Below are positions 21,977 to 41,300 of a stretch of DNA of 64,000 nucleotides, piece after piece. Under the pieces are notes generated by a model that was given only the letters and a program-made list of their open reading frames with translations, was not told the origin of the DNA and ran no database searches. Position 1 is the first letter of the stretch; each line of letters begins with the position of its first letter. The position numbers were made by a program, and so were the translations under genes. The DNA comes from Macrostomum lignano (lineage: Eukaryota), in assembly GCA_002269645.1 (NCBI GenBank), contig NIVC01001097.1:124001-188000 (forward strand), written 5' to 3'.

Positions 21977-22603
<627 letters not shown>

Positions 22604-23225
22604 CAGCTAACAACTTAATAACTGACTGAGAAAACAAAATAATAGCTTTTGACTTAGGAAAGATTAGCCAGAATTCGAAACCGGCCTTTCAACGCTTGGC
22701 GTCAAGCAAAAAGGCGCTTAACTCGAAATTCAGGTGCTGCCCAGTCCGAATTCGAATGTCTGTGGCCAGGGCTGCAGCAGTGAGAAGGGCCGCCGCTAAT
22801 CCCAGTCCATCAAGTCTCCGCGGCGTTAATTCTCCATTAGTGGCGAGTCGTACCTGTCTCTGGGGCGCCCGTCAGCCATGTCAGCCTCGGCAGCCCGGGT
22901 CCAATTTCAAACAGGCTCGGGACAAAAGCTGAAGGGCCTGGGGAAAATGGCTAAAGAGGGGATTAGCGAGAGGCAGCAGGGCTAATCTGATGTTTTGACA
23001 GCCGTGCCATATTGGGAGGGGCGCCCCGCCAGCTCGGGTGTCTGCCATCCTCAGGTGGTGCGGATTAGGACCAGATTTTCTCCTATTCGAAGCTCCCGGC
23101 TGCACTCGAGTCTCGAGTTTGTTTTGCTGGCAGGCCTGAAAATAGACCGCCGGACAGCGGCAAAACACTAATAACTCTGACCCAGCTGCAGCAAGCACGA
23201 GGCTGCGGCTGCCATGAATAAGGGT

Positions 23226-24048
23226 TAGTCAGTCAGTCAGTCAGTCAGTCAGTCAGTCAGTCAGTCAGTCAGTCAGTCAGTCAGTCAGTCAGTCAGTCAG
23301 TCAGTCAGTCAGTCAGTCAGTCAATCAGTCAGTCAGTCAGTCAGTCAGTCAGTCAGTCAGTCAGTCAGTCAGTCAGTCAGTCAGTCAGTCAGTCAGTCAG
23401 TCAGTCAGTCAGTCAGTCAGTCAGTCAGTCAGTCAGTCAGTCAGTCAGTCAGTCAGTCAGTCAGTCAGTCAGTCAGTCAGTCAGTCAGTCAGTCAGTCAG
23501 TCAGTCAGTCAGTCAGTCAGTCAGTCAGTCAGTCAGTCAGTCAGTCAGTCAGCCAGTCAGTCAGTCAGTCAGTCAGTCAGTCAGTCAGCCAGTCAGTCAG
23601 TCAGTCAGTCAGTCAGTCAGTCAGTCAGTCAGTCAGTCAGTCAGTCAGTCAGTCAGTCAGTCAGTCAGTCAGTCAGTCAGTCAGTCAGTCAGTCAGTCAG
23701 TCAGTCAGTCAGTCAGTCAGTCAGTCAGTCAGTCAGTCAGTCAGTCAGTCAGTCAGTCAGCCAGTCAGTCAGTCAGTCAGTCAGTCAGTCAGTCAGTCAG
23801 TCAGTCAGTCAGCCAGTCAGTCAGTCAGTCAGTCAGTCAGTCAGTCAGTCAGTCAGTCAGTCAGTCAGTCAGTCAGTCAGTCAGTCAGTCAGTCAGTCAG
23901 TCAGTCAGTCAGTCAGTCAGTCAGTCAGTCAGCCAGTCAGTCAGTCAGTCAGTCAGTCAGTCAGTCAGTCAGTCAGTCAGTCAGCCAGTCAGTCAGTCAG
24001 TCAGTCAGTCAGTCAGTCAGTCAGTCAGTCAGTCAGTCAGTCAGTCAG
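23226..24048. repeat. (TCAG)n microsatellite
   Basis: Direct reading. Confidence 0.97.
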
Positions 24049-24423
24049 TCTGCCTGCGGCTCTCTTGCCTGACTGTTGTGTTTGGGTGGCTGCCTGCGGC
24101 TCTCTTGCCTGACTGTTGTGTTTGGGTGGCTGCCTGTGGCTCTCTTGCCTCTGTCTCTCGTGCTCTTCCAAACTTCCATTGTGTACAACCCTAACCACCG
24201 GGCCACCCTAGAGGATGCATTACCAAGGGTGACAGGAACGCCAGCTTGGGTTGCTAAGGGCATCAAGACTGCGTGCTACTCGAAGACTGCGCCTGTGGCA
24301 CTTACATCAGTTGCGGACCCAAATTTCGGGAGCGGGATGGGCGGTCACCCCCCGCTTCCCCGCTGCACCTGCCGTCAGTCCAGCCAGTTCGCTTCTCCCT
24401 GGAAATCGCTCTGGGGAGCCGCT

Positions 24424-24462
24424 GGCCAATGGCTTGCGACAGCAAAGTGCCGCTACTATAAA
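24424..24462 (+). promoter_or_regulatory. CCAAT box plus TATA box of ILP gene A
   Basis: GGCCAATGG 24424-24432; TATAAA 24457-24462; ~105 bp before the ATG. Confidence 0.5.
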
Positions 24463-24566
24463 CTGCCGGGCGGCTCCGCGGATCCTCCGGCGCAGGCCGC
24501 GGCCCCTCTCCGCATCTCCGTCTCGTTCAGCAACCTCTCGCTACTCTCTCCCATCAGCAGGCCTCG

Positions 24567-25054
24567 ATGCCGAGCTCAGCTGCCGTGTCCGCCTTCGCCC
24601 TGCTGGTGCTGGCGGCCATCTGCATGGCGCAGTGCAGCGCCAGCCAGCACTCCGACGTCATGGTGGTAGGCCCCCCCCTGCTCACTCTGCTGCTCACCCA
24701 ACCGCTCCCGTCACTGCACTGTGCCTCAAACCCCCTCTGCTTTGCAGGACAGGTACATCAGGAAGTGCGGCTACGATCTCGTCAGGACAATGTGGAAGGT
24801 GTGCAGCCGGAGAGGCGTCGCGGTGAAGCGGGGGCAGCTCAACAAACTTGGTGAGTAGCGGCGGGTGTCCCCCGGATGCACTTTCAGCGCTTCAGGCCGC
24901 ACCCTGTGCGATAATTTCAGTCACCGGCTTGGCCAAGCGGAGCAACAGGCACCGCCTGCCGGAGCTGCAGTGCCTCATCAAGCAGGAGGACGTGGTGTAC
25001 CACTGCTGCTGCAACTGGTGCAAGCTGTCCTACCTGGAGCTGTACTGCGACTGA
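24567..25054 (+). CDS. Insulin-like peptide precursor A (111 aa)
   Basis: Exons 24567-24665, 24748-24850, 24921-25054 (phases 0,1). Signal MPSSAAVSAFALLVLAAICMAQCSA; B chain KCGYDLVRTMWKVC; KR-GQLNKLVTGLA-KR; A chain SNRHRLPELQCLIKQEDVVYHCCCNWCKLSYLELYCD*. Confidence 0.9.
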
Positions 25055-25979
25055 CGCAGGAACTGAATTTGAATTGGCGCCACCCTGAACTGGCCAGTCC
25101 CACCTCCCCCAGTCTCTCTCTGAACTCTCTCTACAGACCAACCCAGAACGCAGTGAATATACGGAGACCTAACAGAGTCCTGCCGCCAGGACATTTTATT
25201 GAAGCTGTTTAAACTTGCTTGTTCAGAGTTGAAGATCTCATTGAACTTGGCCAATATGCGACAGTCTCTCACCCCTATAAGCGAACTGGTTCGGATATAA
25301 CCTGCAGTTGTTTCTTGTCTGCTGGCAGAGCTACCGGTACAAAAGTTTAGCAAAAACAAATTGACAGGTCAGGCTGAGCGACCACCCAGAGACCCCTTGA
25401 CTTACTTAGCGGTTGATTCCGCCAACCCCTGGCGATCACGGGCAGCTGGTGTTGCGGTGTCGCGCAGGGAGATCCGGTGGTGTTACCGGTGTCCAGAGCG
25501 AGGTGCCTCTCCAGAGAGTCCAGGAGGTGGAAATTCTCGCGCTTGAAAATATCTCGGAGACATCCGGGTTTGGGCTGAGGCAGGTGATTCTGTCCTGAGT
25601 AAAAGCCTGATGTTTCTGAGCTTGAGTCCAAGCAGGGCCCTGTGCAGAGGGCGGGGGAGTATGGGGGACAGCCGCGCTGGATTTTGGGAGTCGGGGTGGT
25701 CAGCCCACCTCTCCCACCCAGTGACCCCCCAGTGGCAGAAACCGCGTGTTTGTCTGCTAAAAGCAGCTGTTTTTGGCCTGGAGTCACTCCCAGACCTCAG
25801 AACTGACACAATGAGTTATTCTTGACTGATGCCACCGAAAAATTGATTTTGATGTGGCGAAAACAGCGCATGGGGCCGGAATCAGAAAAATGACATTGGA
25901 TAACATCGAATAGCCAGGAATTTTACCACTGGCTTCTTTTCTTCTTTTGACAATTGATTGGATTCCAATGGGAATCGCT

Positions 25980-26245
25980 TCTGTCAGAGATGAGTTCCAG
26001 CACTGCCCGCTACTGTCAGAGATGAGTTCCAGCACTGCCCGCTACTGTCAGAGATGAGTTCCAGCACTGCCCGCTACTGTCAGAGATGAGTTCCAGCATT
26101 GCCAGCTTCTGTCAGCGATGAGTTCCAGCATTGCCAGCTTCTGTCAGCGATGAGTTCCAGCATTGCCAGCTTCTGTCAGAGATGAGTTCCAGCACTGCCA
26201 GCTTCTGTCAGAGATGAGTTCCAGCACTGCCAGCTTCTGTCAGCC
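25980..26245. repeat. 32-bp minisatellite
   Basis: Unit ctgtcagagatgagttccagcactgcccgcta. Confidence 0.9.
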
Positions 26246-26623
26246 CTGAGCTCACGCGCGCCAGTTCAGCCATTCCCCATCAAAGCCCTCCTACGTCTAT
26301 TTGCGAGCCAAAAGAGAAAAACATCTCTATTTAAAAACATGTAAATACTGAAGTGTTTACGGAAACGTGTCCGGGATGATGTCCGGCCCCCGAGCTGCCC
26401 AGGCCGGGCCCGAGGGCGGCTTGGCAGCGACCCGTTGGCCCAGCTGGGTGGCCAATGGGAGGCGGCGGGGCTGCTCGGGGATAAAGTTGGCAGCCTTCGG
26501 GACCGCCCCGGCCGATGCAGGCGGCCTGGCTGGCTTCCCGCAACACTCACCGACTGATCTTCGCTCTCCACAAGCTCTGCTCAAGCTCTGCTCAAGCTCT
26601 CCTCACTCCGGCCAATCAGCAAG

Positions 26624-27565
26624 ATGCTGCAGACGATGCGCAGCTCGGCACTGACGCTCTCGGCTCTGGTCCTCCTGGCTGTGGCACTGTGCGGCAGCGG
26701 CTCGCAGCAGATTCGAACCCGGTCCGGCTCTGGGCTGGCTGAGGTAGGTCTTGAGCTGTTAAAGTTGCATTCAGCGCTATGCTATCCTAAACCAGCATAT
26801 TTTCGGCCCCAACGCAGCCTAAACTGCCGAGGCTGTGCGGCATCAGGCTGATCAGGAAGCTGTACGAGGTGTGCAAGGACCGCGGCGGCGTCTACAATGG
26901 CGGTCTCATGCGCCGCGTCAGACGCGACACCACCAGCAGCTCTGGTGAGTTGGCTACCTCAGTCTCCGCCATCAGTGCTCACCCCAGCCTCCATAATCAG
27001 TGCTCACCTCAGCCTCCATCATCAGTGCTCACCTCAGCCTCCATCATCAGTGCTCACCTCAGCCTCCATCATCAGTGCTCACCTCAGCCTCCATCATCAG
27101 TGCTCACCCCAGCCTCCATCATCAGTGCTCACCTCAGCCTCCATCATCAGTGCTCACCCCAGCCTCCATCATCAGTGCTCACCTCAGCCTCCATTATCAG
27201 TACTCACCCCAGCCTCCATCATCAGTGCTCAACCCAGCCTCCATCATCAGTGCTCACCCCAGCCTCCATCATCAGTGCTCACCCCAGCCTCCATCATCAG
27301 TGCTCACCCCAGCCTCCATCATCAGTGCTCACCCCAGCCTCCATCATCAGTGCTCACCCCAGCCTCCATCATCAGTGCTCACCCCAGCCTCCATCATCAG
27401 TGCTCACCCCAGACACTGCATAAATTTTCAGTCGGCCAGCTCCTGAAGCGCACCATAGGGCATTCCAAGCTCAAATGCCTGATTCCAAAGGACGACATTG
27501 TGCACCACTGCTGCACCTGCGGGCGGTGCACCTTGTCCTACATGCAGCTGTACTGCAACTACTGA
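26624..27565 (+). CDS. Insulin-like peptide precursor B
   Basis: Exons 26624-26743, 26818-26944, 27432-27565 (phases 0,1). Signal ..SALTLSALVLLAVALCGSGS; B chain RLCGIRLIRKLYEVC; RR-DTTSSSVGQLL-KR; A chain TIGHSKLKCLIPKDDIVHHCCTCGRCTLSYMQLYCNY*; AATAAA at ~27650. Confidence 0.9.
26965..27410. repeat. 25-bp minisatellite filling ILP-B intron 2
   Basis: Unit cagcctccatcatcagtgctcacc(c/t). Confidence 0.95.
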
Positions 27566-28114
27566 TCTGGCGGTGACAATGTCCCTCCACTCAAGGACTG
27601 CCCTTCACCTCCCTTTGCTTCTGTTAACCGAGCAATAACTGCGCTATAAAATAAACTCTATGAGGCTATTTTACCTGTGCATGACTCGCACTGCGCGATC
27701 TCTTTCATTCTTTAATATCCGACAGCACCGCACAGCTGGACTGCACTGATGCTGGCTGACCTTCCGCCGGCAGCTGCAGATCTGCTGCATCAGCCAATAC
27801 GGTGGGAGACCCGCGCGGTGTGCAAATCCGCGGTAATCCTCCATGCAGACGTGCAGTTGGATAATCCTTCGCTTCCAGCAGCGGGATTAGCGCTGTATAC
27901 AGCAATTAGTCTGACAGAGCTCGGGCCCAGTCAACCCCAACCACCTGTGCGTCATCGAATTTCGGCGCTCGTTCAGCCGCAGTCTGAAGAAAGGGGGCGG
28001 CAAAATTCGTCAAAGCTGTTATTTCGAAAATTGCTGCCTTCGAGGACAAGCAAAACGGAGTCGAAATGCTGTTGTGTTTTTTTCTGCAGATAACTGCAGA
28101 AGCTCGGGTGAGAA

Positions 28115-28650
28115 GGCAGATTCAGGACACAGGCAGATTCAGGACACAGGCAGATTCAGGACACAGGCAGATTCAGGACACAGGCAGATTCAGGACACAG
28201 GCAGATTCAGGACACAGGCAGATTCAGGACACAGGCAGATTCAGGACACAGGCAGATTCAGGACACAGGCAGATTCAGGACACAGGCAGATTCAGGACAC
28301 AGGCAGATTCAGGACACAGGCAGATTCAGGACACAGGCAGATTCAGGACACAGGCAGATTCAGGACACAGGCAGATTCAGGACACAGGCAGATTCAGGAC
28401 ACAGGCAGATTCAGGACACAGGCAGATTCAGGACACAGGCAGATTCAGGACACAGGCAGATTCAGGACACAGGCAGATTCAGGACACAGGCAGATTCAGG
28501 ACACAGGCAGATTCAGGACACAGGCAGATTCAGGACACAGGCAGATTCAGGACACAGGCAGATTCAGGACACAGGCAGATTCAGGACACAGGCAGATTCA
28601 GGACACAGGCAGATTCAGGACACAGGCAGATTCAGGACACAGATTGGCAG
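28115..28650. repeat. 17-bp near-perfect minisatellite (ggcagattcaggacaca)
   Basis: Period 28141->28158. Confidence 0.96.
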
Positions 28651-29139
28651 ATTCAGTTAAGTGGTCACTCGAAAGATAAGAAATGGTTATCATATCGTGT
28701 ATATAAACATATATCTGTAACAAAACTACATTTCTGAGTCGACAATGCTGGCACAGAGCAATATTAAATTCAGCATATTTTGCAGTATGAATGAACTCTA
28801 ATTTCTTCTATTCAGCGGCAGAGAAGCCCTATTAAATAATTAAAAGCTGAAAAGCTGAAACGGCGGTGTAAATTGAAAATTCACACATTGCCATCAGTTC
28901 ACAGCTTGGGAATGGCTGCAACAGACTATTATCAGACGAAATGCAATTTATATTTAAAGAATTTCGACACCAATAATCTAATCTCGCTCTCCACATTGCG
29001 GTCGAACAAATCCTTTCTTTAACAATTTTTAGTTTTTTTAATCGAAAAATGTTATATATATTCATATCTTGTCCCAGTTACTGCCAAGAGTAGGAACGTG
29101 CGAATGAAAAAGGTATCTTTTACGAGCGTAACTTTGAGG

Positions 29140-29630
29140 TTCCCAATCTCTCCCTGAACTCCGGAATCTCTCCCTGGACTGCGGAATCTCTCCCTGAACT
29201 CCGGAATCTCTCCCTGGACTGCGGAATCTCTCCCTGGACTGCGGAATCTCTCCCTGGACTGCGGAATCTCTCCATGGACTTCGGAATCTCTCCCTGAACT
29301 GCGGAATCTCTCCCTGAACTGCGGAATCTCTCCCTGAACTGCGGAATCTCTCACTGAACTGCGGAATCTCTCCCTGGACTGCGGAATCTCTCCCTGAACT
29401 GCGGAATCTCTCCCTGAACTGCGGAATCTCTCCCTGAACTGCGGAATCTCTCCCTGGACTGCGGAATCTCTCCCTGAACTCCGGAATCTCTCCCTGGACT
29501 GCGGAATCTCTCCATGGACTTCGGAATCTCTCCCTGAACTGCGGAATCTCTCCCTGAACTGCGGAATCTCTCCCTGGACTGCGGAATCTCTCCCTGAACT
29601 CCGGAATCTCTCCATGGACTGCGGAATCTT
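29140..29630. repeat. 20-bp minisatellite (gcggaatctctccctgaact)
   Basis: Direct reading. Confidence 0.95.
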
Positions 29631-29911
29631 ACGGACCTTTCAAAGAGTCTCATCCAGACAGCTGAAAATTGAATCCCATTCTGAGCCGTGAGCACGGCAA
29701 CGCCAATTTTGTCGGAGCGATGGGATTGGCTGCGCCAGGGCTTCTCATATCCCGGATGCTAGGGGATAAATAGGCTGCAGACCGGTGACCAGCTGCCCGC
29801 TTCTGCATCCGCCCGACAGCGCAGTCTCTCCGCAGATTCTTCCGCCTCCGGCCCGATCGAACAGGCAAATTTGACTCAAATCTGAACTCGACGACTCGCC
29901 AGCACCGCGGC

Positions 29912-31203
29912 ATGTCGGCATCAGCTCAGCTGATTCTGCGGTTCGCCCTGCCGCTGCTTCTCCTGGCACTCGCCGCTGGGCCTCAGCTGGCCGGCTCCGC
30001 AACCGTTCCTCCCGATGTGAGGCTGGCCCTGGCAACTGCAAAATGTCATGGCAACTATCCCACAAAAGCCAAATCTTTCTAGCCACTAAATGTCCTAGTA
30101 ACTAAATCCCATAGCAACTAAATATCATAGCAAGTAAATCCCATAGCAACTAAACACCATGGCAACTAAATCCAAAGCCACTAAATCCCATAGCAACTAA
30201 ACCCCATAGCAACTAAATCCCATAGCAACTAAATCCCATAGCAACTAAATCCCATAGCAACTATATCCCATGGCAACTAAATCTTATGGTAACTAAATCC
30301 CACGGCAACTAAATGCCATAGCAACTAAATCCCATAGCAACTAAATCCCATGGCAACTAAATCCCATGGCAACTAAATACCTTGACAACCAAATCTATTC
30401 ACGGAGTGTGTGAGCAAAGAGCTCGAACTGGTGCCCATGGCCTCTCCATCATTGCAGCAGATCAGCATCCAGCAGTGCAGCGATAACCTGGTCAAAATTG
30501 TCCACTTCGTCTGCCGCAACCGGGGCGGAATCTACGATCAACGGTCCGGCTACCTGGAGCAGGCGGCTCGCTTCGTGAAGAGGGGCAAGCAGCTGGAGAC
30601 CGCAGGTGAGGCCACGAGGTCACCTCGTCATCACGTGTGAGGTCAATGGCATTTGAGCTGGAGATCCGTGTGCTGCGGCTTGACGCTGATGCCTTAAAAA
30701 CGTGTTGATTTGATGCTTGTCGAGAGAAACTCAATGTAGTTTATCCATAGGTCCATGGTATTTGCCGTGAGGTCCATGGTATTTGCCGTGAGGTCCATGG
30801 TATTTGCTGTGAGGTCCATGGTATTTGCTGTGAGGTCCATGGTATTTGCCGTGAGGTCCATGGTATTTGCTGTGAGGTCCATGGTATTTGCTGTGAGGTC
30901 CATGGTATTTGCCAGGAGATGCACCCCTAACTGAAGGCCAAGTGAAGATCCTTGAAATGAAGTTGAGCTTACCAGAAAACGCAGTTCAAGCACTACTCGC
31001 ACAGCAGAGCCGCAACCCCAGCCCTTCACCCCCTGCGCCCCGCAGCCGCCGTAGCCAAGCGCCAGCGCAGCCTGTCCTCGCTGGCCTGCATGATCGAAGA
31101 CGCTGAGAACATCGTGAGCAGCTGCTGCTGCCGCGAGTGCTCGTTGTCCTACCTGTACGGCTTCTGCGCCTACCCCGAGCCAGTTGGGAGAGTAACCAAC
31201 TGA
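29912..31203 (+). CDS. Insulin-like peptide precursor C
   Basis: Exons 29912-30016, 30458/30461-30605 (NAGNAG acceptor), 31046-31203 (phases 0,1). Signal MSASAQLILRFALPLLLLALAAG; B chain QQCSDNLVKIVHFVC; KR-GKQLETAAAVA-KR; A chain QRSLSSLACMIEDAENIVSSCCCRECSLSYLYGFCAYPEPVGRVTN*. Confidence 0.87.
30060..30390. repeat. 16-bp minisatellite (agcaactaaatcccat) in ILP-C intron 1
   Basis: Period 30191->30207. Confidence 0.9.
30750..30912. repeat. 21-bp minisatellite in ILP-C intron 2
   Basis: Unit aggtccatggtatttgc(c/t)gtg. Confidence 0.93.
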
Positions 31204-31365
31204 GTGACCAACTGAGTGACCAACTGAGTGACCAACTGAGTGACCAACTGAGTGACCAACTGAGTGACCAACTGAGTGACCAACTGAGTGACCAACTGAG
31301 TGACCAACTGAGTGACCAACTGAGTGACCAACTGAGTGACCAACTGAGTGACCAACTGAGTGACC
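31195..31365. repeat. 12-bp repeat (accaactgagtg)n starting at the ILP-C stop codon
   Basis: Direct reading. Confidence 0.95.
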
Positions 31366-31739
31366 GCTAAATTAACTAAGCTCTGTCACTGCTACACTGG
31401 AGACAAATTCAAAACACATTAAACCCTTGCGAACTGCAAGATAACAAAATAAAACAATCTCAAGTCGAGTACCCACTCAAGGGTAACCAAGCGTCTCCGC
31501 TGGACCGCGTTGCACCGACTTTGCCGATTCGAAAAAAACACTTTTCGAAGGCTTCTTGGCTTCTTCGTTTTAAATCCCAAAATATGAACCGATTGTTCCC
31601 TCTAGTGTCCGCCACGGGCTGGGGAAGTCTTACAGAGCAGATTTTCTCTGAGGGTTGTGGCAGTCCGGCAGGGATAAAACTGTACTGAGTAAACTGTGGA
31701 AGCCCGGCTGCTCTGCCTGAACTTCATGGGGCAGTGCAA

Positions 31740-32010
31740 TGGGGATTTTGATCGGTGGAGACAGATTGATGGGGATTTCGATCGGTGGAGACAGATTGAT
31801 GGGGATTTCGATCGGTAGGGACAGTGGGATGGGGATTTTGATCGGTAGGGACAGTGGGATGGGGATTTTGATCGGTAGGGACAGTGGGATGGGGATTTTG
31901 ATCGGTAGGGACAGTGGGATGAGGATTTTGATCGGTGGGACAATGGGATGGGGATTTTGATCGGTAGGGACAGTGGGATGGGGATTTTGATCGGTAGGGA
32001 CAGTGGGAGC
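31740..32010. repeat. 30-bp minisatellite
   Basis: Unit gggattttgatcggtagggacagtgggatg. Confidence 0.9.
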
Positions 32011-32444
32011 CTGGGACAATTACAAAATTCATCTGCAGTCAGCTCCATGAAAGCAGACAAAAACTTTGAACTCACTGGAGACAAGAAAGCTTCATGAGGT
32101 TTAGCAGCTCATATTTCAGTCGCAGATGTCTGCAGAGCTCAGTTGCGACTGCGGCGCAAGGGAGGGCAGGCAGCCTGGTGCTCAGCATCGGATGCCAGCT
32201 GCTGACTCGGCAGCTCAGGCTCCCCATCAGCGGGGATCTGACTTCTGAAAGCCGACACCTCCGGCAGAGCAGCTGCGTCAGTCAGCGGCCCCCCACCTCA
32301 GTTCCAGTTGCCTGCCGCAGCAACGCGCAGCTCTGCTCTTTCAGAAGAAAGCAAACCGGGATTGACAGAATTGCTGCTTCTGAATAAATCTGACAGCGGG
32401 ACAGCTGAAAGTTTGGGCAAGATCTGGGCCCGAGTGGGCGCCAG

Positions 32445-33470
32445 CTACAGAAGGGCGCCAGCTACAGAAGGGCGCCAGCTACAGAAGGGCACCAGCTACA
32501 GAAGGGCGCCAGCTACAGAGGGGGCGCCAGCTACAGAGGGGGCGCCAGCTACAGAGGGGCGCCAGCTACAGAAGGGCGCCAGCTATAGAGGAGGCGCTAG
32601 CTACAGAGGGGCGCTAGCTACAGAGGGGCGCTAGCTACAGAGGGGCGCTAGCTACAGAGGGGCGCCAGCTACAGAGAGGCGCCAGCTACAGAGAGGCGCC
32701 AGCTACAGAGGGGCGCCAGCTACAGAAGGGCGCCAGCTACAGAAGGGCGCCAGCTACAGGGGGGGGGCGCCAGCTACACAGGGGGCGCCAGCTACAGAGG
32801 GGCGCTAGCTACAGAGGAGGCGCCAGCTATAGAGGAGGCGCTAGCTACAGAGGGGCGCTAGCTACAGAGGGGCGCCAGCTACAGAAGGGCGCCAGCTACA
32901 GGGGGGCGCCAGCTACACAGGGGGCGCCAGCTACAGAGGAGGCGCCAGCTATAGAGGAGGCGCCAGCTATAGAGGAGGCGCCAGCTACAGAGGGGCGCTA
33001 GCTACAGAGGGGCGCTAGCTTCAGAGGGGCGCTAGCTTCAGAGGGGCGCCAGCTACAGAAGGGCGCCCAGCTACAGAGGGGGCGCCAGCTACACAGGGGG
33101 CGCCAGCTACAGAGGAGGCGCCAGCTATAGAGGAGGCGCCAGCTACAGAGGGGCGCTAGCTACAGAGGGGCGCTAGCTTCAGAGGGGCGCCAGCTACAGA
33201 AGGGCGCCCAGCTACAGGGGGGCGCCAGCTACAGAGAGGCGCCAGCTATAGAGGAGGCGCCAGCTACAGAGGGGCGCCAGCTACAGAGGGGCGCCCAGCT
33301 ACAGAGGGGCGCCCAGCTACAGGGGGGCGCCAGCTACAGAGAGGCGCCAGCTATAGAGGAGGCGCCAGCTACAGAGGGGCGCCAGCTACAGAGGGGCGCT
33401 AGCTACAGAGAGGCGCCAGCTATAGAGGAGGCGCCAGCTACAGAGGGGCGCCAGCTACAGGAGGGGCACG
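32445..33470. repeat. ~17-20-bp minisatellite (ggcgccagctacagagg[gg])
   Basis: Direct reading. Confidence 0.93.
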
Positions 33471-33859
33471 CTACAACTAGTTTGACACAGAATCAAGGTA
33501 AACTCACCTAATATTTGCGCCTCAAATATTGATATTTAATCCCAACTGGATGCGTTATTTTTCTTGTTCCTAAAAAAACTCTGGGGTTGCCGGTGCTGAT
33601 ATCGAGTTTCTCCAGACAGCAGGGACTGACAATAGCCTGGTGACGCGGGCAGGCAGCAGGCCAGTCTGTGCAAATCAATCTGCGCGCTTGTGCCAGTGTG
33701 TGAGCTTAGCAAAATGACTGCAGACTCAAATTGCGCGCTTCTGTCATGCGTGCTGAGTCAGGCGTCCCGCACCATCCGTCCCGATTTATAGGGGACATTT
33801 CTTCGGCTTGCAACGCAAGAACTTTTAAAGCAATTAAGATTAAGATTAAGAGAATTTAT

Positions 33860-34035
33860 GATATGCAGTGCTATACTGAGGTGCAGTGCTGATTGGCGCA
33901 CAGGGGTGTACTGAATACACTGGCACTTATGGGAAAAATCCGACCTTCTGGCAGAACCCTTGATTATCTTGACGGTCCGGAGGGTTGGCGACTTGTGTGC
34001 CTGCATTGCTCCGTTCCGGCGCAGCAAAAAAAGTG
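33860..34035 (-). mobile_element. Fragment of the dispersed repeat family also at 4061-4625 and 62315-62650
   Basis: gcagtgctgattggcgcacaggggtgtactgaatacactggcacttatggg...ccttctggcagaa...ttgctccgttccggcgcagc. Confidence 0.7.
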
Positions 34036-34849
34036 TCTTGGTAGATCAACCAGAAATTGCTTAGGTTCAGTCACCAGCCAGTGAACAGGTGACTCGCGCA
34101 GACGGTCTGTCAGTTTTATTTGATTTATTAAATTTACTGTGCGCAGACGCGTGAATGATGAGGGAGGCTGAGAACTAGGCAGAAGTGCTCAGGCATGAGC
34201 TGGATTGCGCAACAGGCGATTGGCTCGGCTTTAACGATCGCATTTCATACTGAAACATTATTATAAATAATAAGTTTATATATGCTACTAAAAGCTGTCT
34301 TGCACAATAAATTATGTTAATAACAGCGGCACACGGGGCACACAGCCACAGGGAACTCGGGAATGTACTTTTGAGCCAGACTGGCGGCACAGTGTATAAT
34401 GAATAAAGTATAATGAAGGTTAATAAACTCGGGCTGGAATGTTGACAGCATAATGTACTGTAAAACTTATCATAATAGCAACAGTGGTGGCGTCTCAGTG
34501 CCCATGGAAATTTCGTAACGCACGCGTCCATAGCAACCAGTTCTCAATAAATCTAAATAGAAGCAGGGCGGACCCGATGCGGTTGGTAGAAAAAGTGCGC
34601 GTATTAAAACAAAAAACAGTTAAAAACCAAAATGTTCGAATCATTCAGGGCGAGAGTTTATGTACAAGTATGCAGAGCCAACCGCATCCCGGCATGCTGG
34701 GTGGACAAGCAATTGCTTTACTCCTCAATAATCCTCTCAGACAACAGACTAATAACTAACAATAAAATTAGACTTGTATAAAATAACCCTACAGTTACAC
34801 AAGACGTTTGTTTGCACAGCTTTTAGTCTACATAACAGAATCTTCTTCA

Positions 34850-35200
34850 GTAGCATACTACTTCCGGTTCAGTAGTGTACTACTTCCGGTTCAACAGTGT
34901 ACTACTTCCGGTTTAGTAGTGTGCTACTTCCGGCTCAGTAGTGTACTACTTCCGGTTCAATAGTGTACTACTTCCGGTTTAGTAGTGTGCTACTTCCGGC
35001 TCAGTAGTGTACTACTTCCGGTTCAATAGTGTACTACTTCCGGTTTAGTAGTGTGCTACTTCCGGTTCAGTAGTGTACTACTTCCGGTCCAGTATTATAC
35101 TACTTTCGGTTCAATAAGTATACTACTTCCGGTTCAGTAGTATACTACCTCTAATTCACTAGTCCAATGCTTCCGTTTCGGTAGCACGTGCTACTTCCGG
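34850..35200. repeat. 22-bp minisatellite (agtagtgtactacttccggttc)
   Basis: Direct reading. Confidence 0.9.
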
Positions 35201-35355
35201 CTTATTGTTTACAGCGCTTCCGGCAGAATTAGCATACTACTCTATATCCAACACAAATACATTGTTTTCCAATTGAACAGTTAAAAATTCACTATAATTC
35301 ACAGACAGACGCAGCTAAAATGATTAGCAGAGAAGAGTTCACAGCAGGAAGTGTC

Positions 35356-38300
35356 TTAGAAGCTTTCCAGAAAATCCAGCCAGTTGTTCTTCACCCCGGA
35401 TGGCCTCAGCCGGAGCACCAGTTTCCTGATCTCGTCGTACATGAGGATGAGGAAGCCGAAGGGCATTGCGGGCAGCCACCAGGTGAAGCGGAGCGGCTGC
35501 ATCTGCAGGGCCTGGTTCAGGTAGGGCACGTAGACCATCACGATGGCCAGGCCGGTCTCAAACAGCAGCGAGAAGGACAGGAAATGATTCCACATGCCCT
35601 GCTGCAGCAGCGAGTTGCTGCGGGTCTTGCAGGCCAGGAGATTGGCCCACTGCATCACCACAATGCTGGCAAAGAAAGCCGAGTGAGCTGTGTACTCCAG
35701 GCGCTTGCGCTGGTAATAGGACTGCGGGCAGAGCGCAGGGGCTTTGTTTGAGCTTGGATTCTTTTTTTAATACTTCCGGAAAGGTGATAAATTTGGTTAC
35801 AATTTGGTTACAGTTCGCATAGCTGCAGATTCCTACCTTTGGTCCAATGCTTACCCTAAATCTACTCCCGGTTCTTTGTAGTTTCCTGCTTCCACTTTGA
35901 TGTAGTTTCCTACTTCCGGCCCCATGTAGTTTCCTACTTCCGGTTCCATGTAGTTTCCTACTTCCGGTACCATGTAGTTTCCTACTTCCGGTCCCATATA
36001 GTTTCCTACTTCCGGTCCCATAAAGTTTCCTACTTCCGGTCCCATATAGTTTCCTACTTCCGGTCCCATGTAGTTTCCTAATTCGGGTTCTATGTAGTTT
36101 CCTGCTTCCGGTTTCATATAGTTTCCTACTTCCGCTTCCATATAGTTTCCTACTTCCGGTCCCATATAGTTTCCTACTTCCGGTTCTATATAGTTACCTA
36201 TTTCCGGTTGCATATAGTTTTGTGCTTCCGGTTCTGTATAGATGTAGGTGTATATTTTCCAACTTACGGCTCTGTATTTCCCCACTTTCAGCAAAAATTT
36301 CTATCAAAACTGCCTTGTTTCTATTGAGCCTATTGAAAATCCTTAGCCACTTCACACGTACTTAGGGGGTTCAGCAGGTCACTTCCGGTTAGCCTACTTC
36401 ACGGCCGCACTCACCCACTCCTGGCCGTAGCTGTCCTCCAGGTCCACGATGCCCTCGCTGTCCCACACCCGGCGGATGCCGAACAGCCGGCGCGGCCAAA
36501 AGCCGTTCTCGGACAGCACGACGAAGTAGGTGAAGAAGCCGCCGGCCGCCTGCAAGATGCCGATGCGGGCGAAGGCCGAGCTGAGCAGCCGCTCGCTCAC
36601 TAGGCGGTCCCGGCGCGGATTCCTGGGATCGCGGCGCATGATGTCGCTTTCAGCCTCCTCGTAGGCCAGGGAGACGGCCGGGGCCAGGTCTGTGCCGAGG
36701 TCGATGCACAAGATGGTGATAGTGCCCAGGGGCAGCGGGATGCTGACCACCAGGAAGGACAGGAAGCAGATGACCTCGGGCATGTTGGAGGTCAGCGTGT
36801 AGGCGATGGACTTCTTGAGGTTGTCGAACAGGATGCGGCCCTCCTCGATGCCCGTGACGATGGAGGCGAAGTTGTCGTCCGCCAGCACCATGTCGGCGAC
36901 CTGCGGCGGCGGTTGGTATAAACGGCTGAGGCTCAGATCCCCAATCCCTTGACAGGCTCAGATCCCCAATCCCCTGACAGGCTCAGATCCCCAATCCCCT
37001 GACATGCTCAGATCCCAAATCCCCTGACATGCTCAGATCCCCAATCCCCTGACAGGCTCAGATCCCCAATCCCCTGACATGCTCAGATCCCAAATCCAAT
37101 GACAGGCTCAGATCCCAAATCTCCTGACAGGCTCAGATCCCCAATCCTCTGAAGGCTCAGATCCCAAATCTCCTGACAGGCTCAGATCCCCAATCCTCTG
37201 AAGGCTCAGATCCCCAATCCCCTGACAGGCTCAGATCCCCAATCCCATGACAGGCTCAAATCCCCAATCCCCTTACAGGCTCAGATCCCAAATCTTGACA
37301 GGCTCAGATCCCCAATCCCGACAGGCTCAGATCCCCAATCCCCTGACAGGCTCAGATCCCCAATCTCCTGTCAGGCTCAGATCCCCAATCCCCCGACAGG
37401 CTCAGATCCCCAATCCCCTGACAGGCTCACCTGCTTGCTGATGTCGCTGCCCGCCAGGCCCATGGCGATGCCGATGTCCGCCTGCCTGAGCGCCGGCGAG
37501 TCGCTCACGCCGTCGCCAGTGACCGCCACCACGTGACCCAGGCGCTGGCAGCTCTCCACAATGACCAGCTTCTGCTGCGGGGTGGTCCTGGCGAACACGA
37601 GCTCCCGGTGAGTGCGCACCAGCTCGTCCAGCTGGCCGCTGGTCATCTCGGCCAGGTCGGAGCCGTGCACCACGCAGGCGTCGGCCTCCCGCGGGTCCAC
37701 GTGGGACGGGTCGACGCCGCGCTCCAGTGCGATGTCCTCCGCCGTCTTGCTGCGGCTGCTGATGATGTCCACGTGGCGGGCGATGGCCTTCGCCGTGATT
37801 GGGTGGTCGCCCGTCACCATGATGACCTGGAAAGGTGGCGGTGAGATTCGGGTGGGCAGTGGCTGAGATTTGGGTGGGCAGTGACTGAGATTCGGGTGAG
37901 ACAGTGGCTGAGATTCGGATGGGTAGAGACTGAGATTCGGGTGAGACAGTGGCTGAGATTCGGGTGGGCAGTGGCTGAGATTCGGGTGAGCAGTGGCTGA
38001 GATTCGGGTGGGCAGTTACTAAGATTCGGGTGAGACAGTAGCTGAGATTCGGGTGAGACAGTGACTGAGATTCGGGTGGGCAGTGACTGAGATTCGGGTG
38101 GGCAGTGACTGAGATTCGGGTGGGCAGTGACTGAGATTCGGGTGGGCAGTGGCTGAGATTCGGGTGAGACAGTAGCTGAGATTCGGATGAGACAGTGGCT
38201 GAGATTCGGGTGAGACAGTGGCTGAGATTCGGGTGGGCAGTGACTGAGATTCGGGTGGGCAGTGGCTGAGATTCAGGTGGGCAGTGGCTGAGATTCGGGT

Positions 38301-41300
38301 GAGACAGTAGCTGAGATTCGGATGAGACAGTGGCTGAGATTCGGGTGAGACAGTGGCTGAGATTCGGGTGGGCAGTGACTGAGATTCGGGTGAGACAGTG
38401 GCTGAGATTCGGATGAGACAGTGGCTGAGATTCAGGTGGGCAGTAGCTGAGATTAAGGTGGGCAGTGGCTGAGATTCGGGTGGGCAGTGACTGAGATTCG
38501 GTGAGACAGTGGCTGAGATTCGGATGAGACAGTGGCTGAGATTCGGGTGAGACAGTGGTTGAGATTCAGGTGGGCAGTAGCTGAGATTAAGGTGGGCAGT
38601 AGCTGAGATTCGGATGAGACAGTGGCTGAGATTCGGGTGAGACAGTGGCTGAGATTCAGGTGGGCAGTAGCTGAGATTCGGGTGAGACAGTGGCTGAGAT
38701 TCGGGTGAGACAGTGGCTGAGATTCGGATGATACAGTGGCTGAGATTCGGGTGAGACAGTGGCTGAGATTCGGATGAGACAGTGGCTGAGATTCGGGTGA
38801 GACAGTAGCTGAAATTCGGATGAGACAGTGGCTGAGATTCGGGTGAGACAGTGGCTGAGATTCGGGTGAGACAGTGGCTGACATTCGGGTGGACAGTAGC
38901 TGAGACTCGCGAGATTCGCGAAAAGCTAGCACACGCTAGCAACTGCCTACTTATAAGTAGCAAAACACGAGCACGAACAGAAAAGTTCATCCCTGCGCTC
39001 TCCCAGCTCCTCACCTTGATTCCTGCGGAGCGGCACTTCTGCACGGCGTCCGGCACGGAAGCCCTGGGCGGGTCAATCATGGAGATGAGGCCGAGAAACC
39101 GGAGCCCCATGAGCGGGAAGTTCACCTCCTCGGCGTTGAACTCGTATCGCTCGTCGAATTCGTCGGCGGACAGGCGGAGGTCGCAGAAGCCGAGGACCCG
39201 CTCGCCCTGGCCGCCCAGCTCGTTGTAGGCGGCGAGAAAGGAGCGGCGCCACTGGTCGGAGGTCTGCACCTCGCGGCCGTCAACCAGCAGGTGCGAGCAT
39301 CTGTCAAATATGATCTCCGGAGCGCCCTTCATCACCAGTAGGAAGTTGGAGCCGCGCTCCCGCATCACGTGCACGGAGGCCTGGGGCGAGGCGGAGGGGT
39401 GAAGAGGCACTTCCGGTGAATATTCTTGCTTAGAGTGAAAAGGCAATATTAAGTCACTTCCAATCCAATATTCTAGTCACTTCCGGTTTAGAGGGAAAAG
39501 GCAATCCAATAGTCTAGTCACTTCCGGTTTGGAGGGAAAAGGCAATCCAATAGTCTAGTCACTTCCGGTTTGGAGGGAAAAGGCAATCCAATAGTCTAGT
39601 CACTTCCGGTTTAGAGGGAAAAGACAATCCAATAGTCTAGTCACTTCCGGTTTGGAGGGAAAAGGCAATCCAATAGTCTAGTCACTTCCCGCCTCACCTG
39701 GAATTTGTTGGCGCTGCTGAACGGAACCTCGCAAATCTTGGGATGTTGGCGCCGGAACTCCGGCACGCCGCCCACGCACCACTCCATGTACTTGAGCAGC
39801 GCGGACTCGGAAGCGTCGCCAATGCAGTCCCGCTGCAGAATCGGCTTTTCCTCTTCGCCGGCTTTGAACTCCGCCCGGCTGCACAGCATGGCGCACCGGC
39901 TGAGGGCTACCCAGTCAGGGGACTGCGGAGGCGCCGGGGCCGCGCCTTCGCCCATCTGGACCTCCGCGATGCGGCCGCTCTGCCAGGTGTGCGTCACCGT
40001 CATCCGGTTCATTGTCAGCGTGCCTGGCGGGGGCGGCATGTGGTTTTTTAGTTGAACTCAAGTCTGTTGCTAGGCAGTTGCTATGTGGTTTTTTAGGTGA
40101 ACTCAAGTCTGTTACTAGGCAGTTGCTATGTGGTTTTTTAGGTGAACTCAAGTCTGTTGCTAGGCATTTACTATGTGGTTTTTAGGTGAACTCAAGTCTG
40201 TTGCTAGGCGGTTGCTACGCGGTTTTACACCCTCAATAGTCTAGCAATCCCGTTCGCCATCGCTCCCACGCCAGACTCACCGGTCTTGTCCGAGCAGATG
40301 ACGCTGGTGGCGCCCAGAGTTTCCACAGCCTCCAGGTTGCGGACGAAGCAGTTCTTCGAGGCCATGCGCTGGGCGGTGAGGGTCAGGCAGACGGTGACGG
40401 TGGCCAGGAGGCCCTCCGGGATGTTGGCCACGATGATGCCGATGAGGAAGATGATGGAGTCCAGCCAGTCGTACTGCATAGCGAAGGAGGCGATGAAGAA
40501 GGCGGCGCCCATCAGCACGGCGATGACGGTGACGATGTTGATGAAGCGCTCGATTTCCCGGCCGATGGGGGTCTGGCGGGCGTCCAGCCCGGAGGCCAAG
40601 TTGGCGATGCGCCCGATGAGGGTGGCGTCACCAGTGCGGATCACAATGCCGATGCAGTTGCCTGGTGGGGGTGGTGAAATTCCAGCTCAGGCTCATGTGC
40701 TCAATCGCAGCGGGTCTGAAGACAGTGGGATAAAATCCCCATCTCAGGTGCCTCTCTCCCTGAAGCCAGTGGGATAAAATCCCCATCTCAGGTGCACACT
40801 CCCTGAAGCCAGTGGGATAAAATTCCCATCTCAGGTGCTCACTCCCTGAAGCCAGTGGGATAAAATTCCCATCTCAGGTGCTCACTCCCTGAAGCCAGTG
40901 GGATAAAATTCCCATCTCAGGTGCTCACTCCCTGAAGCCAGTGGGATAAAATTCCCATCTCAGGTGCTCACTCTCTGAAGCCAGTGGGATAAAATTCCCA
41001 TCTCAGGTGCTCACTCCCTGAAGCCAGTGGGATAAAATCCCCATCTCAGGTGCACACTCCCTGAAGCCAGTGGGATAAAATTCCCATCTCAGGTGCACAC
41101 TCCCTGAAGCCAGTGGGATGAAATCCCCATTTCAGATGCTCACTCCCAGCGGGTTTGACGCCACAAAGGATAAAATCCCCATTCTTGGGCACTTACCCTC
41201 AACAGCGTAGGTAGAGAAGAACGCCAGGTTCTCTGTCTCCAGCGGGTTCTCGCTGGTGTACTCCCTGGAGCGCACCTGGGGATCGGACTCGCCAGTCAGA

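What the first reader, a model, noticed from the sequence alone, without database searches (positions are those of the whole stretch)
24921..31203. Non-canonical eight-cysteine framework with both extra Cys in the A chain
All three A chains read C-x10/11-CC-(C or xC)-xx-C-x8-C (CCCNWC, CCTCGRC, CCCREC), while the B chains keep only two Cys. Canonical insulins have 6 Cys; molluscan and nematode 8-Cys types add an A-B bridge. Here the extra pair implies a second intra-A-chain disulfide stapling an N-terminal A extension to the CC loop. I do not recognise this arrangement as a described class.
Basis: partly seen in the sequence, partly recalled or inferred. Interest (0 to 1): 0.8.

Follow-up and report, generated by a model that had tools for sequence, protein, structure and literature searches.

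The report
Ordinary flatworm eight-cysteine insulin genes
Three neighbouring insulin-like hormone genes of the flatworm Macrostomum lignano really do carry two extra cysteines in the A chain, but every complete flatworm insulin-like peptide I could retrieve has the same layout, including the published schistosome and liver-fluke ones, so it is a family trait and not a new class, although its presumed fourth disulfide bond seems never to have been mapped.

Summary
The window (Macrostomum lignano) holds three tandem, + strand, three-exon prepro-insulin-like genes. Each has a B chain with C-x11-C and an A chain with six Cys: one Cys 10-11 residues upstream of CC, and one at the position equivalent to human A8 (CCC-x2-C-x8-C; gene 2 has CC-T-C-x2-C-x8-C). 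All three pass Pfam's Insulin threshold.

The novelty claim does not hold. The same eight-Cys layout occurs in two further M. lignano paralogue families and in all 13 complete trematode ILPs recovered (Schistosoma x6, Trichobilharzia x2, Heterobilharzia, Paragonimus x2, Fasciola gigantica). These include the published, receptor-binding SjILP, plus SmILP and FgILP.

It does differ from molluscan MIPs and from octinsulins, which add A-B bridges.

One point stays open. The accessible flatworm papers speak only of six Cys and three bonds. An intra-A fourth disulfide (N-terminal extension to A8) is the most economical reading, but it is untested: AlphaFold2 was unconfident there and gave no coordinates.

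The likely function is a processed two-chain hormone acting on insulin-receptor kinases. Interest is low to moderate.

The parts
24567..24665 (+). ILP gene 1, exon 1: start codon and signal peptide (includes Cys19 and Cys23, presumed removed with the signal peptide)
   Evidence: Spliced model gives an uninterrupted 111-aa ORF. GT donor, phase 0. Identical to P0004.
24748..24850 (+). ILP gene 1, exon 2: B chain (C40-x11-C52), KR site and start of the short C-peptide. Ends in a phase-1 intron.
   Evidence: Pfam Insulin 29.9 bits.
24921..25054 (+). ILP gene 1, exon 3: end of the C-peptide, KR site, and the A chain SNRHRLPELQC-LIKQEDVVYH-CCCNWC-KLSYLELY-CD. Extra Cys85 (24971-24973) and Cys98 (25010-25012).
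26624..26743 (+). ILP gene 2, exon 1: signal peptide and N-terminal propeptide
   Evidence: Matches P0001/P0002.
26818..26944 (+). ILP gene 2, exon 2: B chain (C47-x11-C59) and RRVRR site. Ends in a phase-1 intron.
   Evidence: Pfam Insulin 32.5 bits.
27432..27565 (+). ILP gene 2, exon 3: KR site and the A chain TIGHSKLKC-LIPKDDIVHH-CCTCGRC-TLSYMQLY-CNY. Extra Cys98 (27476-27478) and Cys112 (27518-27520). A one-residue (Thr) insertion after CC is unique to this gene.
29912..30016 (+). ILP gene 3, exon 1: signal peptide
   Evidence: Matches P0003.
30458..30605 (+). ILP gene 3, exon 2: B chain (C42-x11-C54), KR site and C-peptide. Ends in a phase-1 intron.
   Evidence: Pfam Insulin 28.0 bits.
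31046..31203 (+). ILP gene 3, exon 3: KRQR site and the A chain SLSSLAC-MIEDAENIVSS-CCCREC-SLSYLYGF-CAYPEPVGRVTN. Extra Cys99 (31087-31089) and Cys113 (31129-31131).
24426..24462 (+). CCAAT box (24426) and TATAAA (24457), about 110 bp upstream of the gene 1 ATG. Putative core promoter.
   Evidence: Sequence pattern only. Inference.
26452..26485 (+). CCAAT box (26452) and GATAAA (26480) upstream of gene 2. Putative core promoter.
   Evidence: Sequence pattern only. Inference.
29725..29770 (+). Inverted CCAAT (ATTGG, 29725) and GATAAA (29765) upstream of gene 3. Putative core promoter.
   Evidence: Sequence pattern only. Inference.

Best explanation
The window carries a tandem array of three paralogous prepro-insulin-like peptide (ILP) genes of the flatworm Macrostomum lignano. 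Their eight-cysteine framework is the standard framework of flatworm ILPs, not a locus-specific novelty: B chain C-x11-C, and an A chain with one Cys in an N-terminal extension plus CC-C(A8)-x2-C-x8-C.

Proposed mechanism:
1. The signal peptide is removed.
2. The pro-peptide folds around the canonical insulin core (A6-A11, A7-B7, A20-B19).
3. The two additional Cys pair with each other. This ties the 5-16-residue N-terminal A-chain extension back onto the C-terminal end of the first A helix (the A8 position).
4. Prohormone convertases cut at the KR/RR sites flanking a short (11-15 aa) C-peptide.
5. The two-chain hormone activates insulin-receptor-type tyrosine kinases.

Shown here: gene structures, superfamily membership, position of the Cys, and conservation of the layout from Macrostomorpha to digenean trematodes.

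Inferred: the pairing of the two extra Cys (my estimate about 0.55-0.6), the processing sites, and the receptor. The confidence given (0.8) is for the main claim, that these are ordinary members of the flatworm ILP family whose framework is a family trait.
For: Gene models and Cys positions.

Organism and independent gene models. The same three-gene array lies on NCBI contig NIVC01001059.1.

Pfam Insulin is above threshold for all three products. A profile of 15 flatworm sequences matches human proinsulin at E = 1.8e-9. In that alignment D/N-[VI]-V aligns to GlyA1-IleA2-ValA3 and the third Cys to ThrA8.

The same layout occurs in every complete flatworm ILP retrieved. These are M. lignano P0016 (x21) and P0018 (x10), and Fasciola gigantica, six Schistosoma spp., two Trichobilharzia, Heterobilharzia and two Paragonimus (all x14). 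None of the vertebrate insulins found by the same searches has either extra Cys.

No dibasic site lies between the upstream Cys and CC in any sequence, so that Cys stays in the mature A chain. Du et al.'s A chain for SjILP (F94 onwards) includes it (P0041).

The AlphaFold2 model gives the insulin helices, with a coil between the upstream Cys and the A2-A8 helix. The top nine Foldseek hits are proinsulin, IGF or single-chain insulin.

Receptor:
- SjILP binds SjIR1 and SjIR2 and triggers Erk phosphorylation (PMC5391603).
- EmILP1 and EmILP2 interact with EmIR2 (PMC3923246).
- Platyhelminths lack RXFP/LGR3- and LGR4-type receptors (PMC11863921).
- No relaxin R-x3-R-x2-I/V cassette is present.

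Purifying selection: against the second genomic copy, the g1 CDS is 0/336 different while flanking DNA is about 97% identical. The g3 differences spare the A and B chain cores.
Against: The disulfide connectivity is not shown. The AlphaFold2 model is only moderately confident overall (pLDDT 73.7) and is low (about 55) around the upstream Cys, and no coordinates could be inspected.

The Cys never vary, so there is no co-loss or co-gain event to support pairing.

Isopod AGH shows that eight-Cys insulin relatives can adopt non-insulin connectivity (PMC7924870).

Native SjILP in egg secretions ran at 15, 30 and 45 kDa (PMC6480100), which could hint at intermolecular bonds.

Cestode and planarian ILP A chains could not be retrieved, so 'all flatworms' is an extrapolation from Macrostomorpha plus Digenea.

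No expression or functional data exist for the M. lignano genes themselves.
Confidence: 0.8

Rival explanations
1. The eight Cys are all paired within the molecule, but with a non-insulin connectivity. For example, the upstream Cys bonds to A6, A7 or A11, and the A8 Cys takes over a canonical role, as in the 'AGH-type' isomer of isopod androgenic gland hormone.
For: Isopod AGH has four disulfides in an arrangement different from insulin, and only that isomer is active (PMC7924870). Three adjacent Cys (CCC) make alternative pairings sterically conceivable. In gene 2 the inserted Thr preserves the C-x2-C spacing rather than CC-x3-C. AlphaFold2 is unconfident in the extension.
Against: All six canonical Cys, their spacings and the core residues are retained: GlyB8, LeuB11, ValB12, LeuA13, LeuA16 and TyrA19 equivalents. 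The sequences align end to end with proinsulin. The predicted fold is insulin-like.
Confidence: 0.2
2. The two extra Cys are free or form intermolecular bridges, giving covalent dimers or oligomers, or links to a carrier protein.
For: Anti-SjILP antibody detected 15, 30 and 45 kDa species in schistosome egg secretions (PMC6480100). The upstream Cys lies in a flexible, low-confidence segment.
Against: The even number and strict conservation of both Cys across 15 aligned sequences from 13 species argue for a conserved intramolecular pair in a secreted peptide. Gel conditions for the oligomer bands were not established here.
Confidence: 0.12
3. The upstream Cys belongs to the excised connecting peptide, so the mature hormone has seven Cys or the CCC is incidental.
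For: The C-peptide boundaries are only predicted.
Against: In every sequence the KR/RR/RxxR sites lie N-terminal to the upstream Cys, and none lies between it and CC. An odd Cys count would be unusual. Du et al. place the A-chain start of SjILP at F94, four residues before this Cys.
Confidence: 0.03
4. One reading: a new, undescribed eight-Cys insulin class specific to this locus.
For: It differs from MIP, octinsulin and nematode layouts. Pfam Ins_beta is below threshold. No accessible paper speaks of 'eight cysteines' in flatworm ILPs.
Against: The identical layout occurs in published SjILP, SmILP and FgILP and in other trematodes. The CCCX(2)CX(8)C signature is already printed in PMC5391603.
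Confidence: 0.02

Closest known systems
Trematode insulin-like peptides: SjILP and SmILP (Du et al. 2017, PMC5391603) and FgILP (PMC11162077)
   Same: Same eight-Cys framework: B chain C-x11-C, and an A chain with one upstream Cys plus CCC-x2-C-x8-C. Also shared are the V-V-x-x-CCC and YL-x-x-[FY]-C motifs, the R-G-[GIV]-Y stretch after B19, and a basic cleavage site just N-terminal to the upstream Cys. SjILP binds the parasite's insulin receptors.
   Different: The upstream Cys is 14 residues before CC in trematodes, against 10-11 here (21 in paralogue P0016). Schistosome genes have two exons split by an 8-12 kb intron; the genes here have three exons with 70-487 bp introns and form a tandem triplet. 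Sequence identity is only about 30%.
Molluscan insulin-related peptides (MIP type)
   Same: Eight Cys, a two-chain processed hormone, and one extra Cys N-terminal to CC in the A chain.
   Different: The MIP A chain is C-x-CC-x3-C-x8-C, and the partner of the extra Cys is an extra B-chain Cys, giving three interchain bonds (PMC9221753). Here the B chain has only two Cys, and the second extra Cys is at A8.
Ambulacrarian octinsulins (Veenstra 2021, PMC8286064)
   Same: Eight Cys, KR processing sites, and a phase-1 intron in the C-domain.
   Different: Octinsulin sequences in the paper's supplement have the extra Cys after B19 (C-x2-C) and directly after A20 (CC), which is an extra A-B bridge at the C-terminal ends. 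That Cys-layout feature was tested and not met. Octinsulins are thought to act on an LGR, a receptor type reported absent from flatworms.
Vertebrate insulin and IGF
   Same: The core six Cys and their spacing, the GlyB8, LeuB11, ValB12, LeuA13, LeuA16 and TyrA19 equivalents, and an A1-A3-like D/N-[IV]-V. The best solved-structure match is human proinsulin, E = 1.8e-9.
   Different: There are two additional A-chain Cys, and the A chain is extended N-terminally by 10-16 residues beyond the A1 equivalent. The B24-B26 FFY is reduced to [GV]-[AVI]-[VY].
Isopod androgenic gland hormone and eight-Cys palaemonid IAGs
   Same: Insulin-superfamily two-chain hormones with four disulfides (PMC7924870).
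   Different: The AGH connectivity is non-insulin-type. From memory only, not checked here, the extra Cys of AGH/IAG lie in the B chain. No sequence comparison was made.

Membership tests
Insulin/IGF/relaxin superfamily (Pfam PF00049) | Profile match above the curated threshold | tested here: met
   29.9, 32.5 and 28.0 bits against a cut-off of 23. The profile of 15 flatworm sequences hits proinsulin at E = 1.8e-9.
Insulin/IGF/relaxin superfamily (Pfam PF00049) | B chain C-x11-C and A chain CC-x3-C-x8-C | tested here: met
   Met in g1 and g3. g2 has CC-x4-C-x8-C because of a one-residue insertion.
Insulin/IGF/relaxin superfamily (Pfam PF00049) | Signal peptide, and basic cleavage sites flanking a connecting peptide | tested here: met
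   Hydrophobic N-termini are present. KR/RR pairs lie at g1 60 and 73, g2 72/75 and 88, and g3 76 and 89. Cleavage itself is inferred.
Insulin/IGF/relaxin superfamily (Pfam PF00049) | Conserved phase-1 intron in the C-domain (Veenstra 2021) | tested here: met
   Intron 2 of all three genes is phase 1 and lies in the connecting peptide.
Insulin/IGF/relaxin superfamily (Pfam PF00049) | Insulin fold | tested here: inconclusive
   The AlphaFold2 model (pLDDT 73.7) has the B helix and two A helices. The top nine Foldseek PDB hits are proinsulin, IGF or insulin, but E = 0.2-2.
Flatworm ILP (SjILP/SmILP/FgILP type) | A-chain signature CCCX(2)CX(8)C (Du et al. 2017) | tested here: met
   g1 has CCCNWC-x8-C and g3 has CCCREC-x8-C. 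g2 deviates by one inserted Thr (CCTCGRC).
Flatworm ILP (SjILP/SmILP/FgILP type) | A single additional Cys in the A-chain N-terminal extension, downstream of the basic cleavage site | tested here: met
   Present in all three genes (x10, x10, x11), in the four complete M. lignano P0018-family models and P0016, and in all 13 trematode sequences (x14).
Flatworm ILP (SjILP/SmILP/FgILP type) | Binds or activates the flatworm insulin-receptor tyrosine kinase | not testable with these tools
   Shown for SjILP and for EmILP1/2 with EmIR2. Not known for M. lignano.
Molluscan MIP type | A chain C-x-CC-x3-C-x8-C plus a third B-chain Cys forming a third interchain bond | tested here: not met
   The B chains have two Cys, and the upstream A Cys is 10-11 residues from CC, not 1.
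Octinsulin | Extra Cys after B19 (C-x2-C) and a terminal CC at A20-A21 | tested here: not met
   There is no Cys after B19 or after A20 in any of the three.
Nematode beta-type insulins (Pfam PF03488) | Profile match above threshold | tested here: not met
   Best score 15.8 bits against a cut-off of 21.
Relaxin / INSL-type LGR ligands | B-chain R-x3-R-x2-[IV] receptor-binding cassette, and a cognate LGR in the genome | tested here: not met
   No cassette is present. Platyhelminths are reported to lack RXFP/LGR3- and LGR4-type receptors (PMC11863921).

The most novel reading that the evidence does not exclude
Flatworm ILPs as a whole, of which these three genes are members, form a structurally uncharacterised subclass of the insulin superfamily. 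A fourth, purely intra-A-chain disulfide would tether an N-terminal A-chain extension to position A8. That would cap the A1-A3 face, which in vertebrate insulin contacts the receptor. The trait would date back at least to the common ancestor of Macrostomorpha and Neodermata. It has been overlooked because the parasitology papers count only six Cys. It could explain why parasite ILPs and host insulin discriminate between the two flatworm insulin receptors.
Probability: 0.45. Interest if true: 0.45.

Novelty: new member of a known kind. Interest (0 to 1): 0.3.

Why it matters
For this window the result is a correction. The striking Cys pattern is the normal signature of flatworm insulin-like peptides, so it does not define a new hormone class.

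What it adds:
- The signature reaches back to one of the earliest-branching rhabditophoran lineages.
- M. lignano, a transgenic and RNAi-tractable model, has at least five ILP paralogue types, three of them in one compact array.
- The published descriptions of schistosome ILPs ('six cysteines, three bonds') leave two invariant Cys unexplained.

Mapping that fourth bond would matter for anyone making recombinant or synthetic SjILP or SmILP for receptor or vaccine work, because misfolded eight-Cys peptides are easy to produce.

Tried and rejected
1. The word-indexed homologue search with the three window proteins found only M. lignano. An exhaustive HMMER search was needed to reach trematodes.

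3. Planarian ILP. The only Schmidtea sequence I could find (supplement of PMC11863921) is a B-chain exon fragment, and a search with it returned nothing. The planarian A chain therefore remains unseen.

4. Cestode ILPs (EmILP1/2, TsILP) did not appear in either search, and no sequence is printed in the accessible text.

5. Wang et al. 2014 (FEBS J) and Miller & Newmark 2012 are not held. The Cherif-Feildel Cys-motif table is external to the paper.

6. AlphaFold2 was run to test the Cys-Cys proximity. Only summary statistics are returned, so the S-S distance could not be measured.

7. I considered and rejected a fourth ILP gene in the window. The motif hits at 53164-53208 (+) and 35565-35609 (-) have no B chain or insulin context.

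8. I considered relaxin-type signalling and rejected it.


Full report
WHAT IS THERE

A six-frame scan of the 64-kb window for the insulin A-chain motif CC-x3/4-C-x8-C gives three hits on the + strand inside the reported range: 25004-25048, 27509-27556 and 31123-31167. It also gives two unrelated chance hits elsewhere.

Each hit is the last exon of a small three-exon gene that splices cleanly with GT-AG introns:
- g1: 24567-24665, 24748-24850, 24921-25054 (111 aa)
- g2: 26624-26743, 26818-26944, 27432-27565 (126 aa)
- g3: 29912-30016, 30458-30605, 31046-31203 (136 aa)

In all three, intron 1 is phase 0 and lies between the signal peptide and the B chain. Intron 2 is phase 1 and lies in the connecting peptide. 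Intron 2 is the position Veenstra describes as characteristic of all insulin genes (PMC8286064).

All three products exceed Pfam's curated threshold for PF00049 Insulin. Each gene has a CCAAT box about 30-40 bp upstream of a TATAAA or GATAAA element, which itself lies 110-147 bp upstream of its ATG. That is a sequence pattern only.

WHOSE GENOME

Every close database match is from the free-living flatworm Macrostomum lignano. P0004 is 100% identical to my g1 product, and P0001/P0002 and P0003 correspond to g2 and g3. So the splicing is independently supported.

The NCBI assembly GCA_002269645.1 carries the same three genes in the same order on contig NIVC01001059.1, followed by a minus-strand P-type cation ATPase. 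The window is collinear with that contig at about 90-98% identity and differs mainly in minisatellite copy number. It is therefore another haplotype, homeologue or assembly of the same locus.

Between the two copies the g1 coding sequence is identical (0/336). The three amino-acid differences in g3 fall in the signal peptide and the connecting region, not in the A or B chain cores.

THE OBSERVATION

- B chains: C-x11-C only.
- A-chain parts: C-x10-CCC-NW-C-x8-C (g1), C-x10-CC-T-C-GR-C-x8-C (g2) and C-x11-CCC-RE-C-x8-C (g3).
- The remaining Cys of g1 (C19, C23) and g2 (C23) are in the hydrophobic N-terminal signal region.

A profile alignment to human proinsulin (E = 1.8e-9) places D/N-[VI]-V on GlyA1-IleA2-ValA3, CC on A6-A7, the third Cys on ThrA8, and the following Cys on A11 and A20. 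In insulin numbering, one extra Cys is therefore at A8. The other lies 5-6 residues N-terminal to the A1 equivalent, in an extension of the A chain.

Basic processing sites (KR, RR, KRQR) lie N-terminal to this upstream Cys, and none lies between it and CC. It should therefore remain in the mature A chain.

IS IT A NEW CLASS? NO

An exhaustive HMMER search of 1.84 billion representative proteins with the three mature regions returned 25 proteins at E <= 0.001. A follow-up profile search added more.

Every complete flatworm sequence among them has the same layout.

M. lignano paralogues at other loci:
- P0016 (upstream Cys 21 residues before CC)
- the P0018 / Mlig020476 family (10 residues)

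Trematodes, all C-x14-CCC-x2-C-x8-C with B chain C-x11-C:
- Fasciola gigantica 'insulin-like protein' WUG45439.1 (137 aa, the length of the published FgILP)
- Schistosoma mansoni, S. rodhaini, S. japonicum, S. mekongi, S. intercalatum and S. turkestanicum
- Trichobilharzia regenti and T. szidati
- Heterobilharzia americana
- Paragonimus westermani and P. heterotremus

The vertebrate insulins picked up by the same search have neither extra Cys. A nematode hit (Rhabditophanes, P0029) has a different layout, with extra Cys in the B chain and a terminal CC.

P0041 (S. japonicum, 130 aa) matches the domain landmarks Du et al. give for SjILP: signal peptide M1-E24, and an A chain beginning at F94. 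So their published A chain contains the upstream Cys (Cys98). The same paper states the A-chain signature 'CCCX(2)CX(8)C'.

It is.

WHAT IS NOT KNOWN

[quoted passage not shown] FgILP is described only by a generic CC...C...C motif. A full-text search found no open paper that combines 'eight cysteine' with flatworm ILPs.

The founding papers (Wang et al. 2014; Miller & Newmark 2012) are not held. I therefore cannot exclude that they discuss the point.

COMPARISON WITH OTHER EIGHT-CYS INSULINS

- Molluscan MIPs have A chain C-x-CC-x3-C-x8-C and a third B-chain Cys, giving three interchain bonds (PMC9221753).
- Octinsulin sequences in Veenstra's supplement have the extra pair after B19 (C-x2-C) and directly after A20 (CC).
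- Pfam's nematode beta-type model scores below threshold.
- Isopod AGH has four bonds in a non-insulin arrangement (PMC7924870). I did not compare its sequence.

It is the flatworm class.

HOW IT PROBABLY WORKS

With eight Cys and an intact canonical core, the simplest arrangement is A6-A11, A7-B7 and A20-B19, plus a bond between the extension Cys and the A8 Cys.

Geometry allows it (inference). The A1-A8 helix spans roughly 10 A, and the 5 or more residues between the upstream Cys and A1 can fold back along it. The spacing varies (10, 11, 14, 21) but is never shorter than 10, as expected for a closed loop of free length with a lower bound.

AlphaFold2 with a 15-sequence alignment gives pLDDT 73.7 and these helices:
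- the B helix (16-29)
- a helix in the connecting peptide (36-50)
- a short helix ending just before the upstream Cys (56-59)
- a coil (60-66)
- the two A helices (67-73 and 78-82)

Confidence around the upstream Cys is only about 55, and no coordinates are available. The bond could therefore not be checked. Foldseek's nine best PDB matches are all proinsulin, IGF or single-chain insulin, with weak E-values as usual for such small folds.

After folding, convertase cleavage at the two basic sites would release an 11-15-residue C-peptide.

The receptor is most likely an insulin-receptor-type tyrosine kinase:
- SjILP binds SjIR1 and SjIR2 and triggers Erk phosphorylation.
- Echinococcus ILPs interact with EmIR2.
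- Flatworms are reported to lack RXFP/LGR3- and LGR4-type receptors.
- The relaxin B-chain cassette is absent.

An extension tethered over A1-A8 would sit next to the A1-A3 face used for receptor binding in vertebrates. This may bear on the receptor selectivity seen in parasites (speculation).

RIVALS

- A non-canonical connectivity, as in AGH (about 0.2).
- Free or intermolecular Cys (about 0.12). The 15/30/45-kDa SjILP species in egg secretions are the only hint.
- Removal of the upstream Cys with the C-peptide (about 0.03). The position of the basic sites contradicts this.

LIMITS

- Cestode and planarian A chains were not obtained. 'Flatworm-wide' therefore rests on Macrostomorpha plus Digenea.
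- The Cys never vary, so there is no evolutionary test of pairing.
- No expression or functional data were examined for M. lignano.

VERDICT

The structural inference is plausible but untested. These are new, previously unstudied members of the known flatworm ILP family. A modest residual interest lies in the unmapped fourth disulfide of that whole family.

Noticed in passing
window 25977-26243, 26956-27412, 28114-28642, 29145-29629, 30080-30378, 30749-30913, 31190-31365, 31728-32008, and about 35 more arrays across the window: The window is packed with long, highly regular minisatellites (periods 4-112 bp, up to 200 copies), each with a different unit. Intron 2 of gene 2 and both introns of gene 3 consist largely of such arrays. 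Most long mechanical ORFs in the window are just translated repeats.
   Followed up: partly
window 31190-31365: A 12-bp repeat (GAGTGACCAACT, 14.7 copies, 99% identical) starts inside the last codons of gene 3. The stop codon TGA (31201-31203) is part of the first repeat unit, and every unit carries an in-frame TGA. The C-terminal ...VTN and the start of the 3' UTR are therefore repeat-derived.
   Followed up: no
window 27509-27529: Gene 2 alone, among the complete flatworm ILPs examined, has a one-residue insertion (Thr) between CC and the extra Cys (CCTCGRC). The C-x2-C spacing is kept, while the CC-to-A11 loop grows to x4.
   Followed up: partly
window ~35300-41150 (- strand), by collinearity with L001 15848-21538: A multi-exon P-type cation ATPase gene lies downstream of the ILP array on the opposite strand (Pfam Cation_ATPase_N, E1-E2_ATPase and Cation_ATPase_C in the NCBI model). 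One UniProt model (P0044) fuses an ATPase C-terminal fragment to an ILP of the other paralogue family.
   Followed up: partly
window 21980-41150 vs L001 (NIVC01001059.1:62162-83699): The window is a second copy of this locus (a different haplotype, homeologue or assembly). It is 90-98% identical, with different repeat copy numbers. The gene 1 CDS is identical, gene 3 has 9 nt and 3 aa differences, and the start codon region of gene 2 differs (ATG here, AAG in P0001/P0002).
   Followed up: partly
database proteins P0005-P0015, P0044 (M. lignano): Many UniProt / WormBase-ParaSite models of these same genes are mis-spliced, frame-shifted or fused, for example P0008, P0013 and P0015 (499 aa). Cys counts taken from those entries would be misleading.
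   Followed up: partly
literature: PMC6480100: Native SjILP was detected at 15, 30 and 45 kDa in egg secretions. The authors ascribe this to dimers and trimers while counting only six Cys. The two unexplained Cys could be relevant.
   Followed up: no
window 24426-24462, 26452-26485, 29703-29770: All three ILP genes share a CCAAT (or inverted ATTGG) box followed about 30-40 bp later by TATAAA or GATAAA. This suggests three independent, similar core promoters rather than one operon-like unit.
   Followed up: no
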